Of a DNA stretch of 64,000 nucleotides, positions 44,637-64,000 are shown piece by piece. The stretch spans positions 25,544,001-25,608,000 of the forward strand of contig NC_135658.1 of NCBI RefSeq assembly GCF_964188315.1. The letters are read 5' to 3'. The position numbers and the translations under genes were made by a program. Source of the stretch: Podarcis muralis. Its lineage: Eukaryota. The notes under the pieces were generated by a model. The model was given only the letters and a program-made list of their open reading frames with translations. It did no database searches and was not told the origin of the DNA. How positions within the stretch are numbered: position 1 is the stretch's first letter; each line of letters begins with the position of its first letter.

Positions 44637-47600
44637 TCATACCTTTTGCTGTATAAAATTTTCAAGTTTTATTATAATACATGCTGTACACTCCATCACT
44701 CTCATAGCAACTTCAGAAGTGAACCTGTCATTTGGAATCTGCGGAAAAGGAAGGAGGTCTGGATAGCGAGTTTTTAAGCTATCGACTCCATATGCTTCCA
44801 GTGTGTGAACATCGTTTGTAAGGCCTTCAAGCTGTTGGCTATATTCCTCGATCTTTTGTGCCAGTGCAGTGGGTTTCACATCTTTATCAGACTTGCCCCT
44901 TACGGCATAATCAGCAGCAATCAAAGCAAGCTTGGTAGACAGGTAACATTTAAAGCAAACCCATTCGTTGGCATTTTTATGAAGGTCATTTCTTGCTGCT
45001 GAAAAGTTTGCTCTAGCTTGCCGTAACCACCTACGAGCCTCAACAGGATTTCCAACTGACTTGAATGTAGGTGGCATAAAAAACCGCTGGGAATATGAAG
45101 GACCTGTAGAAGATGGACATTTTTCTTTAGACTGTTGTCTTTCAGATTTGTGACTCGTTGCTTCCTGGTTCCATGAAGTATAAAACCTTTGAAATGAAAA
45201 TTTGTCTGATTGAAATCGAGAAGCTGATGATGAAAATGTTCTTCTGGATGCCCTATCTGCGTTTTGGTCAATAAAAGCCTGCTTTTCTAATCTGTTGATC
45301 TCATTTTGTAAATGCTTGAAAACTTCATTGGCAATATCAAGGTTCTCTGCATTTTTGTCTGGATGCCACTTAAGATACAGCCTTCTTATGATCTTTTTCC
45401 TTTCAGATTCTGGAAGCTTCCAAGCTTGTTCCATCACAGATGTAACTTCCCTCAAAATCTCTGATAAAGAATTTGCTTTAGCCTTTTTGGGAGAATGATG
45501 TTTAGATGAAGAGGAAGAGGAGGAGGAGGAGGATTTGTGACTCTCTCTTCCGGGAAAATGAGGAGGAATTGTTCTTGGCCCATGCGGTAGAAATTCTGTG
45601 GGACTTGTTGGAGTAGATGGTGCACTGCCCCTGCTCTGAGAACTTTCATCAGGCCTTGAGAACTTGTACAAATCAAGAGAGCTCACTATCTTGTACTCGC
45701 TGTATCCAATGTCAATCTGATAAATCTTGCCCAGGAAACTGGAATTTTCATCATCTTCCCTTTCTACTTCTTGCACAATGATAGCATATGTATAGGTGGG
45801 ATGGTACGACCCATAGATATCACCACCTTCAGCATCGACAAGATAGCCAACGTATTCACCAGGATAGAAAACATTCATTGGATCCATAAGAAGAGTATAG
45901 TGGATTTCAGTTGGTATAGGAGTGCCAGGCATAGGTAGTTCAAGCTTTGATGGTTCTGAAGAGTCATACTTCACACCTAAACTGTCAAGCTTCTCACTAA
46001 TTCTATAAATATCATTGCAACCCAACATAGCAATTAAATAGGATGTATCAGAAATCAGATTATCAGTTGCAGATTTCAGGGTCATTGCTAATGCTAGAAG
46101 GAAATTGATGTCTTTGCTATCTGAGTGCTGTATATAGAGCAATATTACTGCATTTCCATATCTCTTTAAAAAGGCGAATGTTTCACTTCTGCTGTGAGGA
46201 ATAGGAGCAAAACCTTTCACTCTCAGTGTTGTTTGCAACTTCTCAAAACAAGAAACTTTCAAGCCTTCTCTCAAGGTTTTGCAAAGTTTTATGGCTTTCT
46301 CTTCATTGGCTAAGAATGCGTTGTCATTTTCATGTTTCATAATTCTAATTAGTCCCGTGATGAACTGTTCAGAAGACAGCAGTAACTGGAGCCTGCCTTG
46401 GAGAGAACAAAGTGCTCCAAACTGACAAATTTTGGGTGACTCTTCATCCAACTGCTCCTCAAGGATGCTGCTGAGGAGACGGGGTCGCAGCTTCTGGGGA
46501 AACAGCATTATCAGTTTGGTGTGAAAACCATGGTCTTTTCCTAAGTAACACTGGCTAAGATCAACAAGCATTTGAACACCAATGTTTCCTTGTATTCTAC
46601 TTTTGTAATGTGGTGCATCATCAAAAACTAAGATGCTTGATTTCACCAATCTACCATCTTGGCTTGGAAGATAAAGAGCCAGATCTCGCACATTTTCAAG
46701 CTCATTTCTAACCTTAACAGAATCATTTTGAAGGCTTTTAAACAGGCCAGAGACAACTCGTTTAACAGTACGCATTTCGTTAGGATCAAGCTGTTTTCCT
46801 TCAGAGTTCTTGAATATGCGACTCAGAACCTCAACATACTGCTTTGTTGAAATAACATCTTCAGTGCCTAAGTGTTTAAATAGTTGGTGGAAGGTGCCAA
46901 GTTCTAATGGAAGTTTGTACAAGTAAGGTTTGAAGTCAGATTCATACTCAAGATTTATTACGACTTCCTCAGGCTTCAGAAGCTTCCAACCTTCTTCAAC
47001 CATTACAAAAGCAACCCCTCGAAGCTGAAACCGGAATTCTCTTTTGTCTGTACTAAGAAATTCATAGATGCTCCTTAGGACTTTAACCCTTGTTTTTACC
47101 ATATCTTCATCCAAAGTTGTTATATTACATATATTTCTGCAGTTATTTATAACTTTGTCTAGAGGTGGGTCCAAGTTCACATTAAGCATAGTCAAAACCT
47201 GCTCAAGTTGTTCCTGTGGACCAAGACTGCTTCCTTCTTGTTCTCTGATACTTAAAGGCGTAGCTTTTTCTGGAAGGATAGGACACGAAGTCCAAAGGAG
47301 CTGCAAAACGTCACTCTGTTTGAATTTTGGGTTTACTTGGGCTCCACTGAACTTTATAAGAGGGAGGGTTCCATTAACCTCTTGATACTGTGGATGGAAT
47401 CTTACAATTTCTGCCGGGGCACGTTCTGGACACAAGAATGCTATTAAAGACAATTCTTTAAGGAAGTTTCCAGATAGCAAATCAGTTCTTTCTTGAAATA
47501 TGTGATGGAGGAGGACATCCACTGTATTCTGCAGTGTATCCTTAGTCCAGTTTTCAGTGTTGGCTCTCATACTGATCTCTTTCGCAAACTGCAGTAACTG

Positions 47601-60519: not shown

Positions 60520-61446
60520 TGTGGGTAGATCCCATTGAGTGCCCAGGCGGAAACCCCCGACCCCAGGAGCCACCCAGGTGGAATGAATGACTTCTAGCAA
60601 CATGTTATGGGATTAAAATTGGCCACAACTTTATTTAAACTTTCAGATGTAGGAAGACTTTGGCTTAGGCACTGGGCGTTTATCCCTCCCAGTCCCCAGC
60701 CAGGGATCTGAGGCACATCAGGGTTATCATATCTGTCTGGGGAGTGGGTTGGCTCTGGAAGACATATGTTTACCCCGAGAGCCCTCCCCCTATTTCACCG
60801 CAACACAGGAGAGTGCACTGACAACCTTTCAGTGTATGGCCAGTGACTCCCCTCAACACAACCCCTTTAACGGGAAACCCTGGGAATGACGGGGGCGTTT
60901 TGCTACGGGGAAGGCGAAACCTGCCAATGCAGGGAAAATTCCTTCCGGGTCCTTTAACAGCAACCATCGTAACACCGTAGCAGCACCCGCATACCTGTAA
61001 AGAAGTGAACCTGCAATAAAGAGCATAAATAAAGGGAGGATAGGGCGGGTGAAGCTCTGGAGCCAACTGAGAGCTCCCAAATAGGCTTTGCCCGCTTATG
61101 TACACGAAGAGCGGACCGGAGTGAAGACTACTCTTTCTTGGTTTGCTCTCTCTTGGCTCTGCCTCCGCCCGTCGCAACTGGATCATTTTGAACTGAGGTT
61201 TGGCGGGAACCTCAAAGGGCTGTGACGAGCGGAGGTGGACCAGGAGCGCTCTGCCGGGAGTCTTGGAGGATTGGGGGTGCTGGATGTGGGCACAAAAACG
61301 GCACCCTCCGGTTAAGGGGGAGAGCGGTCACTCTTCTGCTCTCCCCTATGCTAAGAATTTGTAATAAAGGTAATCCTAGATTTTATAATTTTATTTCTTA
61401 CACTACTGAGACCACCTGAGGGGTTTGAATGGAATCTCCTGCTACA
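60520..61446. mobile_element. LTR-like GC-richer insertion, boundaries uncertain
   Basis: TGT...ACA ends and poly(A)-like signals on both strands. No matching TSD was found. Confidence 0.35.
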
Positions 61447-62114
61447 ACTTCTTAGGATTATAACATGATTCAGCCATGATAAACTGGCACATCCTATGCC
61501 CTTTTAAAATGTGGTGGGGGGGGTTGGGGGGAGTTATTGGGTTGCTTTTATTTTGATTATATATTTTGTGCTTTTGTGCTTTTATATTTTGATTTTGTTT
61601 TGTGAACTGCCCTGAGACCTCCGGTTATTGGAGGCATATAAATTCTATTATTCTTATTCTTATTATTAATACCATGATTCCTCTTGAAGTGTTAAACTAG
61701 CATAAACTTGCACTGCCACATGTGCCACATTATATTCATTCTGCACACATAAGAAATTTATATTTTATACCATTGCTAAAGTTTGGAGATCTTTAAATCA
61801 TAAACCTGTAGATCCTACCTTAATCACATATTGGTATATTTGTTCTGGAAGCTAATTCTCATGAAAAAACCTGATAGACAAGTAACGTGAGCAAAGAACC
61901 AACAAAAAGTCAGATTTTCTGTAACTTGGTTCAATTTTATTTAATATGAACTTCATAAAAAACATGGATACAGACCACCAACTTCTCACAGGGACTTATG
62001 GGAGTATGTTTTTATTTATTATTTGTATTGTATTTGTTTGGCAAGATGTAGCACTCTTGAAGGCAGGAAGATGTTGTTTGTTCATTCTGAAAACAATAAA
62101 AATTGTTTAAAAGA

Positions 62115-62405
62115 TAAATTAATATTTTAGTGTGGCAGCACCTACATTTTGGAACTCCCTGTGTACTGGGATCAGACAGAAATCTTCATTGTACTCTTTT
62201 AATAACTGCTTAAAAACATTTTTGTTCAGGCAAGCCTATCCAGACAAATAGAGCACTTCCATGTATTTCAATCTCTTTAGCTTACTGTAATTTTTAATTA
62301 TCTTTTGAACATTTTAAATACATGTTTCAAATTGTATTTTAAAACAATTTTAAGTTTTAGTCTTTTTGTAAATTAGAGGTGTGGCATATAAATTTTATGA
62401 AATAA
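62115..62405 (+). mobile_element. Probable L2 LINE 3' end
   Basis: GTGTGGCAGCACC...TGGAACTCCCT...TTAAAAACATTTTTGTTCAGGCAAGCC, followed by an AT-rich tail. Confidence 0.55.
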
Positions 62406-62933
62406 TTCTCTAGAGAACTTGAAGGGCACAGGAAGTGAGATAGGAACTTTTTTGCTTTTTATCTGGGTGTCCTGTTTATTGTTGTCTTTCTCTTTTATGA
62501 ATAAATTGCAATATAATTTAATATAATTTTTAATTAAGATACATGTCCTCTTGCATCAGCTCAACTTATACACACAATCTTTACAAAGCTTTTATAAATC
62601 TATGTGCAGTTCATAGTGGAACACTTTACTAATTCAAATTTGCTCATAATGAAAACTGTTGTGTATAAAACTAAGTATGAACCACATATTGTATAGCATT
62701 CACAAGTTTCTTCAGCTTCCTGAGAAATATTCTTCTTATAACCTTACAGAATTTATTTTTCCAATATGTCCTTAAGCAGTATTAGTATAAGTAATTAAAA
62801 TCTGAAAAAAACACAAGTGAACCAGGGCTGTAACCATTACCATTCTGGAACATGAGTCAAGCAGAACAACCAGTAATCAAACGCACACAAATGCTAGACT
62901 TTTGTTCAGCAGTTACTCAGACAACAGTCCTAC

Positions 62934-62960
62934 CTGAAAATCCCCAGAGAAGCTGTTGGG
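62934..62960 (-). CDS. SACS: Candidate 27-nt in-frame SACS microexon (adds AQQLLWGFS)
   Basis: TTATATTTTAG|CCCAACAGCTTCTCTGGGGATTTTCAG|GTAGGA. Frame-preserving and stop-free in the phase-1 frame of the giant exon. Confidence 0.65.
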
Positions 62961-63708
62961 CTAAAATATAATGAAATGCATTTTAAGGAGGAAATGAAGA
63001 TGATAATAATAATGACACATGGCAACTATGATGTGTGCCAGAGCAAACTGTAACTGCAGTGATTTGTCCATTCTTTTATATAAGGAAATGGCTGCTTTGT
63101 TCGGATAAAAGGGATTCTTCCATACGCACATTAACCATTTTCTTTCAAATAATCAGAATGAAAATTTTCCTGTTATACTAAAGGAATGAGTGACCTTTTG
63201 TATATAGCAACAACTGTCGAAATCTCTGTTGCAGTTCTACTTTTATTCAGCATGTTGCATCATTATTGTATCAATGCATCTGTTATTTCTTTTGGAAGGT
63301 TTTTGTGCAAAGCTAGGCATAAATAAAGACAGTTCTTGTCAGAGTTTGCTAACTTCTACACAGAACACAAGAAAAATAAGGGTAGCACTCACTAGGATGT
63401 GGCTATTTTTCAATATTGTAATCTCAATATTGCATACTGAAGATCCGTACCACGAATTGACATAAAGTGAGCCAGTTCTTCCCAGCAAAAGTTTTAAATC
63501 TGAAGAATGTCTCACACATGTTTTTTTTTTTTTTTTGTCTATGTTGATCAACATGAACAACAGCACATACTAACTGTAGTACACAATGGATATATTTTTT
63601 CCAAGAAGGATATTTGCTTCTAAATTTTCATTTTTTCTGATTCAGTAATAAACCTGACTCTCATGGATACATAAAATGATTATGGATCATTCAAAAAAAA
63701 TTTAATTA

Positions 63709-63942
63709 CAGTGTAGCTTCAGGTTACGTTGCCTCTGACTTACATCACCCTCAGCTTGTGACCAGCACAAACCCGGAATACTGGAACAGGTTACTTCTGG
63801 GTTTGCGCCGTTCGCGTAGGTGCAGAAGTGCTAAATCGTGCCGTGTGCGTGCGCAGACACAACTCTTTGGGTTGGATGCATCGTTTTCAGGTTGCGGCGA
63901 GGCCTCTGGAACAGATCCCCACCATAACCTGAGGTTCCACTG
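63709..63942. mobile_element. Tigger-like MITE, related to 21090-21350
   Basis: TA-flanked CAGTGTAGCTTCAGGTTA...TAACCTGAGGTTCCACTG. Confidence 0.8.
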
Positions 63943-64000
63943 TATTTCATTCCTTTTGCCTTTACTTATGTCCATTCTTAAGTGTTTTGTGTCCTGATTA

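What the first reader, a model, noticed from the sequence alone, without database searches (positions are those of the whole stretch)
62928..63000. Candidate neural 27-nt microexon of sacsin with an SRRM4-type signature
Seen on the - strand: a pyrimidine tract TCATCTTCATTTCCTCCTT, then TGC 18-20 nt upstream of the acceptor (62980-62978), TTTTAG|, 27 nt, and CAG|GTAGGA. It preserves frame and phase 1 and would insert AQQLLWGFS just before GRACTQLQ in the first sacsin repeat. Established: neuron-specific microexons of 3-27 nt are frame-preserving and are activated by SRRM4/nSR100 via a UGC motif near the 3' splice site. Inference: a neuronal sacsin isoform, relevant because SACS loss causes a Purkinje-cell ataxia. 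The first codon assumes the upstream exon ends in G.
Basis: partly seen in the sequence, partly recalled or inferred. Interest (0 to 1): 0.75.

Follow-up and report, generated by a model that had tools for sequence, protein, structure and literature searches.

The report
Ancient 27-base sacsin microexon, wall lizard
The 27-base stretch is a genuine alternative mini-exon of the ataxia gene SACS, conserved from sharks to mammals and already present in gene models of other species, but whether it is neuron-specific or controlled by SRRM4 could not be tested here.

Summary
On the minus strand there is a pyrimidine tract (63003-62985), UGC (62980-62978), an AG acceptor, a 27-nt open exon (62960-62934) and a GTAGGA donor. 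The exon lies 6.7 kb upstream of the giant last SACS exon, which starts at 56215.

The splice signals alone are not special: the pair ranks 3rd of 181 frame-preserving AG..GT pairs, and 46% of AGs in this intron have a UGC within 40 nt. The encoded peptide decides it. AQQLLWGFS is identical to a 9-residue insert, at exactly this exon junction, in annotated sacsin isoforms of Pogona, Anolis, Rhineura, a turtle and a swallow. Close variants occur in snakes, mammals, frogs, gar, teleosts and sharks.

I found the exon with AG/GT in genomic DNA of corn snake, camel, spadefoot toad, turbot and elephant shark. Against the snake, it sits in the only conserved block of the intron. A 27-nt human SACS micro-exon was listed in 2015 (Li et al., Genome Res).

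The window is Podarcis muralis. Its X1 protein model lacks the insert.

Neural specificity and SRRM4 dependence remain untested. The four RNA runs barely express SACS, and the UGC position is conserved only among squamates.

Verdict: a real exon, already known as a kind, with its regulation open.

The parts
62934..62960 (-). 27-nt cassette microexon, phase 1-1, encoding (A)QQLLWGFS(G)
   Evidence: The peptide is identical to the insert in annotated isoforms P0006, P0122, P0124, P0128, P0129, P0130 and P0149. tblastn of P0006 residues 728-738 hits 62961..62929 at 100% identity.
62961..62962 (-). 3' splice site AG (TTTTAG|)
   Evidence: An AG is present at the same place in snake, camel, toad, turbot and elephant shark.
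62928..62933 (-). 5' splice site GTAGGA (CAG|GTAGGA)
   Evidence: The crude PWM ranks it 3rd of 426 GT sites in the intron part. GT is conserved in all six species.
62978..62980 (-). UGC at -20..-18, between the pyrimidine tract and the AG
   Evidence: It is at the same position in corn snake but not in the other species. The background rate is 46%.
62985..63003 (-). Pyrimidine tract with a possible branch point (TTCAT, A at 62995). No AG occurs from -67 to the acceptor.
   Evidence: Only 1.2% of AG-to-AG gaps in this intron reach 65 nt. The branch point is an inference from a yUnAy match only.
62753..62989 (-). Conserved block shared with the corn snake SACS intron (239 aligned columns, 76% identity): about 29 nt upstream, the exon, and about 180 nt downstream
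   Evidence: It is the only intronic match between window 56216-64000 and snake locus L002.
44637..56215 (-). Giant last coding exon of SACS (acceptor ...TTTCAG|GA; 3858 codons plus stop), the downstream splice partner of the microexon
   Evidence: Its translation is 100% identical over 3858 residues to P0123, sacsin isoform X1 of Podarcis muralis.

Best explanation
This is the wall-lizard (Podarcis muralis) ortholog of an ancient alternatively spliced 27-nt cassette microexon of SACS. It lies in the last intron, 6.7 kb upstream of the giant exon. The upstream coding exon lies beyond the window end.

When the exon is skipped, the junction reads ...AAKSR-G-RACTQ. When it is included, nine residues (AQQLLWGFS) are inserted and the junction Gly is rebuilt from the exon's last G. 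The core pattern x-Q-Q-x-L-W-G-x-x has been kept since the common ancestor of jawed vertebrates.

An AlphaFold model of the Pogona inclusion isoform predicts that AQQLLW lengthens the preceding helix by about two turns and that GFSG forms a short linker before a beta strand. The site is about 400 residues downstream of the first Hsp90-like sacsin domain. Local confidence there is low, so this is most likely a surface element that changes a local interface.

Shown here: the exon, its splice sites, its orthology, and its annotation as an alternative isoform in many species. Inferred: that it is used in this lizard, that inclusion is tissue-regulated and probably enriched in nervous tissue (my estimate about 0.6), and that SRRM4 takes part (about 0.4).
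For: Sequence and frame are. The identical or near-identical 9-residue insert sits exactly between ...SR and G-R(P/A)CTQ in 37 of 125 scorable sacsin proteins. These include Pogona X1/X5, Anolis X3/X4, Rhineura X1, Chrysemys X1 and Hirundo X1 (all AQQLLWGFS). Variants occur in snakes (AQQLLWGVK/VQ), bat and cattle (AQQLLWGYS), frogs, gar, teleosts (VQQYLWGCS) and basking shark (VQQHLLGCP).

Genomic copies with AG and GT are at corn snake L002:19931-19957, camel L005:33625-33651, Spea L003:15695-15721, turbot L001:9427-9453 and elephant shark L004:28962-28988. Several of these are not in those species' own protein models. Nucleotide identity to the lizard exon is 19-25 of 27. The exon sits in the only block of the intron conserved with the snake.

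In alignment A1 of 33 inclusion isoforms, R290, Q293, G297 and G300 are invariant, and Q292, L295 and W296 are at least 90% conserved. In the AF2 model, helix 277-296 runs through the first six inserted residues.

Li et al. 2015 (PMC4317164, Supplemental File 1) list a 27-nt 'predicted novel micro-exon' in human SACS, found as insertions at exon-exon junctions in GTEx brain, muscle and nerve RNA-seq.
Against: There is no RNA evidence from this species. In four RNA runs only four reads touched 55916-56515, and none was informative about the microexon. The Podarcis muralis X1 model (P0123) and a Podarcis lilfordi model (P0131) lack the insert. Some RefSeq isoform models could have been propagated by homology rather than by reads. 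AF2 confidence over the insert is low (mean pLDDT 51 for model residues 291-300), so the structural reading is weak. I could not verify that the human exon of Li et al. is the same exon except by its length, its gene, and the fact that a predicted human isoform in the hit list carries an insert at this junction.
Confidence: 0.93

Rival explanations
1. One reading: the microexon is neuron-specific and is activated by SRRM4/nSR100 through the UGC between the pyrimidine tract and the 3' splice site, giving a neuronal sacsin isoform.
For: The layout is pyrimidine tract (-41..-23), UGC (-20..-18), then a weak acceptor and a strong donor. No AG occurs for 67 nt upstream, a gap reached by 1.2% of AG gaps. 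This matches the extended branchpoint-to-3'ss region described for neural microexons (PMC12871342). It also matches the 'UGC between BP and AG' seen in 74-79% of SRRM3/4-dependent microexons (bioRxiv 10.1101/2024.09.17.613571). The UGC is kept at -20 in the snake. The human exon was detected in a data set dominated by brain samples. From my own knowledge, most deeply conserved vertebrate microexons of 27 nt or less are neural (Irimia et al. 2014).
Against: UGC is not positionally conserved outside squamates and is absent within 100 nt in turbot. It occurs upstream of 46% of AGs by chance. The long AG-free stretch is not conserved (nearest AG at -19 in camel, -22 in toad). SACS is absent from the tables of 144 SRRM3/4-dependent microexons, where the control genes APBB1, TAF1 and ITSN1 are found. 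That list is a selection, so this is weak evidence. SACS is also absent from the MicroExonator and Torres-Mendez 2022 supplements that are held. There are no tissue data for this species.
Confidence: 0.4
2. A real conserved alternative microexon whose inclusion is set by other means, for example PTBP1 repression through the UCUU-containing pyrimidine tract. Alternatively it is included at a low to moderate level in several tissues, such as brain, nerve and muscle, without a neuron-specific switch.
For: Li et al. screened brain, muscle and nerve, and attribute micro-exon control mainly to RBFOX and PTBP1. The upstream tract contains UCUU. Both isoforms are annotated in many species whose RNA data are not only neural. 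The conserved block in squamates lies mostly downstream of the exon (about 180 nt), not in the region where SRRM4 acts.
Against: No GCAUG occurs within 220 nt downstream or 100 nt upstream in any tetrapod examined, so RBFOX control is not indicated. PTBP1 motifs were not tested against background. There are no tissue data.
Confidence: 0.5
3. A chance pseudo-exon: an AG..GT pair with an open frame in a long intron that is never used.
For: There are 181 frame-preserving AG..GT pairs in 7.8 kb, and two others score as well or better on a crude PWM. There is no read support in this species.
Against: The peptide is identical to annotated inserts at the same junction. The exon and its splice sites are conserved in six genomes from shark to camel. 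It sits in the only conserved intronic block against the snake, and the better-scoring rivals (59504-59493, 59543-59493) lie in unaligned sequence.
Confidence: 0.02
4. The conserved block is another functional element, such as an intronic non-coding RNA or an enhancer, and the open frame is incidental.
For: About 180 nt downstream of the exon are conserved between lizard and snake.
Against: No Rfam family matches 62500-63300 at E up to 1. Folding of 62750-63010 is no more stable than shuffles (z = 0.22). Beyond squamates the conservation narrows to the exon and its splice sites. The protein-level pattern xQQxLWGxx is kept while nucleotides change.
Confidence: 0.03

Closest known systems
Human SACS 27-nt micro-exon listed by Li, Sanchez-Pulido, Haerty and Ponting 2015 (Genome Res 25:1; PMC4317164, Supplemental File 1)
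   Same: Same gene, same length (27 nt) and same strand sense. It was detected as an insertion at an exon-exon junction in RNA-seq. A predicted human isoform in the hit list carries a 9-residue insert (AQQQLWGYS) at the same junction.
   Different: It appears only as a coordinate line in a list of 310 predicted exons. No tissue profile, regulator or function is given. I did not look up any human DNA, so identity of the two exons is inferred, not aligned.
RefSeq/Gnomon sacsin isoforms carrying the 9-residue insert (for example Pogona vitticeps X1 XP_078246153.1, Anolis carolinensis X3, Rhineura floridana X1, Chrysemys picta X1, Hirundo rustica X1)
   Same: The insert AQQLLWGFS is identical and sits at the identical junction. 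These species also have isoforms without it, so it is treated as alternative.
   Different: The Podarcis muralis X1 model (P0123) lacks it. An older Pogona X1 model (P0002, 4591 aa) also lacked it, while the newer one (4600 aa) has it, so annotation seems to depend on data depth.
SRRM4/SRRM3-dependent neural microexons (for example in TAF1, ITSN1, APBB1)
   Same: Length of 27 nt or less, frame-preserving, deep vertebrate conservation, a strong donor, a pyrimidine tract followed by UGC before the AG, a long AG-free region, and insertion into a low-confidence, probably surface-exposed segment next to folded elements.
   Different: Neural enrichment and SRRM4 dependence are not shown. The UGC position is not conserved across vertebrates. 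The gene is not in the SRRM3/4-dependent table I could search.

Membership tests
Orthologous SACS 27-nt cassette microexon of jawed vertebrates | 27 nt, canonical AG/GT, frame and phase preserved, no stop codon | tested here: met
Orthologous SACS 27-nt cassette microexon of jawed vertebrates | Same position: in the intron directly upstream of the giant exon, inserting between ...SR and G-R(P/A)CTQLQ | tested here: met
Orthologous SACS 27-nt cassette microexon of jawed vertebrates | Peptide pattern xQQxLWGxx | tested here: met
   AQQLLWGFS is identical to 7 annotated proteins.
Orthologous SACS 27-nt cassette microexon of jawed vertebrates | Inclusion in mRNA of this species | tested here: inconclusive
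   only 4 reads in 4 runs, none informative. The stretch that can be laid (6,000 nt at most) cannot hold both the microexon and the acceptor at 56215.
SRRM4/nSR100-dependent neural microexon programme | Inclusion enriched in neural tissue | not testable with these tools
   The runs offered carry no tissue label and barely express SACS. VastDB is not available.
SRRM4/nSR100-dependent neural microexon programme | UGC between the pyrimidine tract or branch point and the AG | tested here: inconclusive
   It is present at -20 in lizard and snake, but at variable positions or absent elsewhere, and the background is 46%.
SRRM4/nSR100-dependent neural microexon programme | Extended branchpoint-to-3'ss region | tested here: inconclusive
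   The AG-free stretch is 67 nt in lizard and 49 in snake, but 19-36 in the other species. The branch point was not mapped.
SRRM4/nSR100-dependent neural microexon programme | Response to SRRM4/SRRM3 gain or loss | not tested
   The only indirect evidence is that SACS is not among the 144 SRRM3/4-dependent microexons in the tables of bioRxiv 10.1101/2024.09.17.613571.
RBFOX-regulated micro-exons | (U)GCAUG within about 200 nt downstream | tested here: not met
   None occurs in lizard, snake, camel, toad or turbot. There are two in elephant shark.

The most novel reading that the evidence does not exclude
The exon is a neuron-specific, SRRM3/4-switched microexon that defines a neuronal sacsin isoform kept for more than 400 million years. 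This isoform would have been overlooked in work on Charlevoix-Saguenay ataxia, which uses the canonical protein without the insert, so the exon and its splice sites would be an unscreened target in unsolved patients and a missing piece in disease models.
Probability: 0.35. Interest if true: 0.55.

Novelty: already known. Interest (0 to 1): 0.3.

Why it matters
SACS loss causes a childhood-onset spastic ataxia with Purkinje-cell degeneration. None of my searches of the open-access full text found a paper that discusses this exon. It appears only as a line in a 2015 supplementary list and in automated gene models.

An insert of nine residues, conserved from sharks to mammals, inside the first repeat of sacsin is very likely under selection. 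If the inclusion form is the main neuronal form, expression constructs, antibodies, variant interpretation and diagnostic panels based on the canonical form would miss it.

For the scan itself, this is a clean positive control. A reader working from raw sequence picked out a true, conserved microexon that the species' own X1 protein model lacks.

Tried and rejected
- **Splice-signal scoring alone** could not separate the exon from two other intronic pairs. Conservation did.
- **RNA reads.** It still returned runs of the species.
- **The one read-laying run** went on the giant-exon acceptor (55916-56515), hoping to read the overhangs. It gave 2 intronic reads in X22 and none in X23 or X24. X20 had 2 reads ending at the 56215 boundary with unmatched continuations, below the tool's 3-read display limit. 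This is no test.
- **Fetching more genomic loci.** The turtle and basking shark genes exceed 100 kb. The bird, two bat or turtle isoforms and the platypus protein are not on record.
- **Literature, main text.** Searches for SACS with microexon, micro-exon, SRRM4 or cassette exon returned only 'yolk sacs' or unrelated acronyms.
- **Literature, supplements.** None are held for Quesnel-Vallieres 2015, Ciampi 2022, the 2026 chick preprint or the CHyMErA-seq paper.
- **Supplements without SACS.** SACS is absent from those of Torres-Mendez 2022, MicroExonator and the SRRM3/4-sensitivity preprint. Irimia 2014 is not held under the id I tried.
- **Second protein word search.** A junction-spanning 161-residue piece found only 4 short fragments, none with the insert.
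- **Internal-repeat check.** BLAST of the region against the later sacsin repeats found nothing aligned at the insert.
- **Foldseek against the PDB.** There was no match at E of 0.001 or better, only weak repeated Hsp90 rows at E 0.2-0.5.
- **Rfam and folding of the block** were negative.

Full report
**1. What is at the coordinates**

Read on the minus strand, the window carries these elements in order:
- a pyrimidine tract at 63003-62985
- AAAA, then TGC at 62980-62978
- ATTTCATTATATTTTAG, with the AG at 62962-62961
- 27 nt at 62960-62934
- GTAGGA at 62933-62928

The giant SACS exon begins at 56215 behind TTTCAG and runs as one open frame to the stop at 44637. In phase 1 the 27 nt read (G)CC CAA CAG CTT CTC TGG GGA TTT TCA G, which is AQQLLWGFS. 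The final G rebuilds the junction glycine with GA of the giant exon.

**2. Chance**

The part of the intron that lies in the window (56216-64000) holds 181 AG..GT pairs that are 3-51 nt apart, a multiple of three, and open in phase 1. The candidate ranks third. Its donor is strong (3rd of 426 GT sites) and its acceptor middling (42nd of 496). A TGC within 40 nt upstream occurs at 46% of all AGs in this intron. The signals alone therefore do not lift the candidate above chance. One feature is unusual: there is no AG for 67 nt upstream of the acceptor, and only 1.2% of AG-to-AG gaps in this intron are that long.

**3. Identity of the locus**

The translation of the giant exon is 100% identical over 3858 residues to sacsin isoform X1 of Podarcis muralis (P0123). 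It is 99.5% identical to the Podarcis lilfordi protein. The window is therefore wall-lizard SACS. P0123 reads ...[16 protein letters not shown] at the junction. Two things follow. And this annotated isoform skips the 27 nt. The upstream coding exon is not in the window: tblastn with the N-terminal parts of three reptile sacsins finds nothing between 62961 and 64000.

**4. The decisive evidence: the same nine residues in other species**

A word search with the start of the giant exon returned 120 sacsins. Locating the junction in each showed that many carry exactly nine extra residues between ...SR and G-RPCTQLQ. After adding members of three clusters, 37 of 125 scorable proteins have the insert.

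| Group | Insert |
|---|---|
| Pogona vitticeps X1 and X5, Anolis carolinensis X3 and X4, Rhineura floridana X1, Chrysemys picta X1, Hirundo rustica X1 | AQQLLWGFS |
| Snakes | AQQLLWGVK or AQQLLWGVQ |
| Bat and cattle | AQQLLWGYS |
| Frogs | AQQLLWGYA, -CT, -CA |
| Gar | VQQLLWGCT |
| Many teleosts | VQQYLWGCS |
| Basking shark | VQQHLLGCP |

A predicted human isoform in the list also has an insert there. I noted it from the tool output and did nothing further with human sequence.

Isoforms with and without the insert differ by 9 residues in the same species (for example 4589 against 4580, and 4588 against 4579), so the exon is treated as alternative. In an alignment of 33 inclusion isoforms, the Arg before the insert, the second Gln, the Gly and the junction Gly are invariant. 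The first Gln, Leu and Trp are at least 90% conserved.

**5. Genomic conservation**

I fetched five SACS loci. All five hold a 27-nt exon with AG and GT in the intron upstream of the giant exon:
- corn snake, L002:19931-19957
- camel, L005:33625-33651
- spadefoot toad, L003:15695-15721
- turbot, L001:9427-9453
- elephant shark, L004:28962-28988, encoding VHRHLWGCP

The snake, toad, shark and camel protein models do not include the exon, so the DNA evidence does not depend on those annotations.

The exons share 19-25 of 27 bases with the lizard. blastn of the whole 7.8-kb intron part against the snake locus gives only two matches. One is the start of the giant exon. The other is a 239-column block at 76% identity covering 62989-62753, that is, about 29 nt upstream, the exon, and about 180 nt downstream. 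The two rival pairs that scored better in step 2 lie in unaligned sequence. Beyond squamates, conservation narrows to the exon and the splice sites.

**6. Other explanations for the conserved block**

No Rfam family matches 62500-63300. The block does not fold better than shuffled sequence (z = 0.22).

**7. Is it used, and where?**

The four RNA runs of this species that I could lay are two studies of unknown tissue, each sampled at 6-13%. They hardly contain SACS. Two intronic reads came from one run. Two reads in a single-cell run stop at the 56215 boundary with unmatched continuations, too few for the tool to print. This says only that splicing at 56215 probably occurs. The joined exon model was not mine to build.

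Elsewhere, Li et al. 2015 list a 27-nt 'predicted novel micro-exon' in human SACS. It was found as inserted sequence at exon-exon junctions in GTEx brain, muscle and nerve RNA-seq, with at least 5% inclusion in at least 15% of samples of a tissue. No paper text in the library discusses the exon.

**8. The SRRM4 signature**

The lizard layout of pyrimidine tract, UGC, then AG fits published descriptions. A UGC between branch point and AG is found in 74-79% of SRRM3/4-dependent microexons. An extended branchpoint-to-3'ss region is reported for neural microexons.

The UGC is at -20 only in lizard and snake. It lies at -10 in the toad, -39 in the camel and -5 in the elephant shark, and is missing in turbot. 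The AG-free stretch is also not conserved. SACS is not among the 144 SRRM3/4-dependent microexons in the tables I could search, where APBB1, TAF1 and ITSN1 are present. That set is a selection, so this is weak evidence. No GCAUG lies near the exon in tetrapods, which argues against RBFOX control.

My estimates are about 0.6 for neural enrichment and about 0.4 for SRRM4 dependence. They rest mostly on what is generally known about deeply conserved microexons.

**9. What the insert may do**

Pfam places the first sacsin (Hsp90-like) domain at residues 101-332 of the Pogona protein. The insert is at residues 733-741. An AlphaFold2 model of residues 443-1002 with the insert has mean pLDDT 75.4. 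It shows helix 277-296 running through AQQLLW, then GFSG as a linker, then a strand at 306-308. Confidence falls to about 51 over the insert, between blocks of 80-91. This suggests a helix extension and a probably exposed linker between two well-predicted elements. It is a weak inference. Foldseek finds no significant solved relative of this region, only weak Hsp90 rows.

**10. Verdict**

It is already present in public gene models and in one published list, so it is not new as a kind, although the wall-lizard X1 model lacks it. The neuronal and SRRM4 reading remains a reasonable but untested hypothesis.

Noticed in passing
window 56001-60000: The part of the last SACS intron just upstream of the giant exon is G+C-rich (0.52-0.54, against about 0.40-0.43 around it). 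The same intron segment, from microexon to giant exon, is 6.7 kb here but 2.3 kb in corn snake, so extra sequence has been inserted here. An ORF of 212 codons lies at 57018-57656 on the plus strand.
   Followed up: partly
window 56213-56205 (- strand): The giant exon starts G-R-A-C-T-Q in Podarcis, where almost all other vertebrates have G-R-P-C-T-Q. The second residue after the junction is Ala instead of a nearly universal Pro. Scomber also has Ala.
   Followed up: no
L002:19931-19957 and snake proteins P0121, P0137, P0145, P0148: Snakes have changed the last two inserted residues from FS to VK or VQ, while the QQLLWG core is kept. The variable tail (FS, YS, YA, CS, CT, CP, VK) may be lineage-specific tuning.
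   Followed up: no
window 62925-62958 (- strand): The minimum-energy fold pairs the exon's CAACAG with CUGUUG just downstream of the donor, a small hairpin enclosing the 5' splice site. The snake keeps only 4 of these pairs and the camel none, so it is probably not meaningful.
   Followed up: partly
L005:51573-58950: A sarcoglycan-family gene lies downstream of SACS on the opposite strand in the camel locus, as listed in the gene table. I did not check whether the wall-lizard window holds the same neighbour in 1-44000.
   Followed up: no
P0164 (Logan-derived fragment, 174 aa): This is a degenerate sacsin-like fragment that spans the exon junction without the insert (…ALKEAAQARGRPHTQLHLLN…) and carries many substitutions. 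It looks like a processed pseudogene or a poor transcript assembly from a mammal.
   Followed up: no
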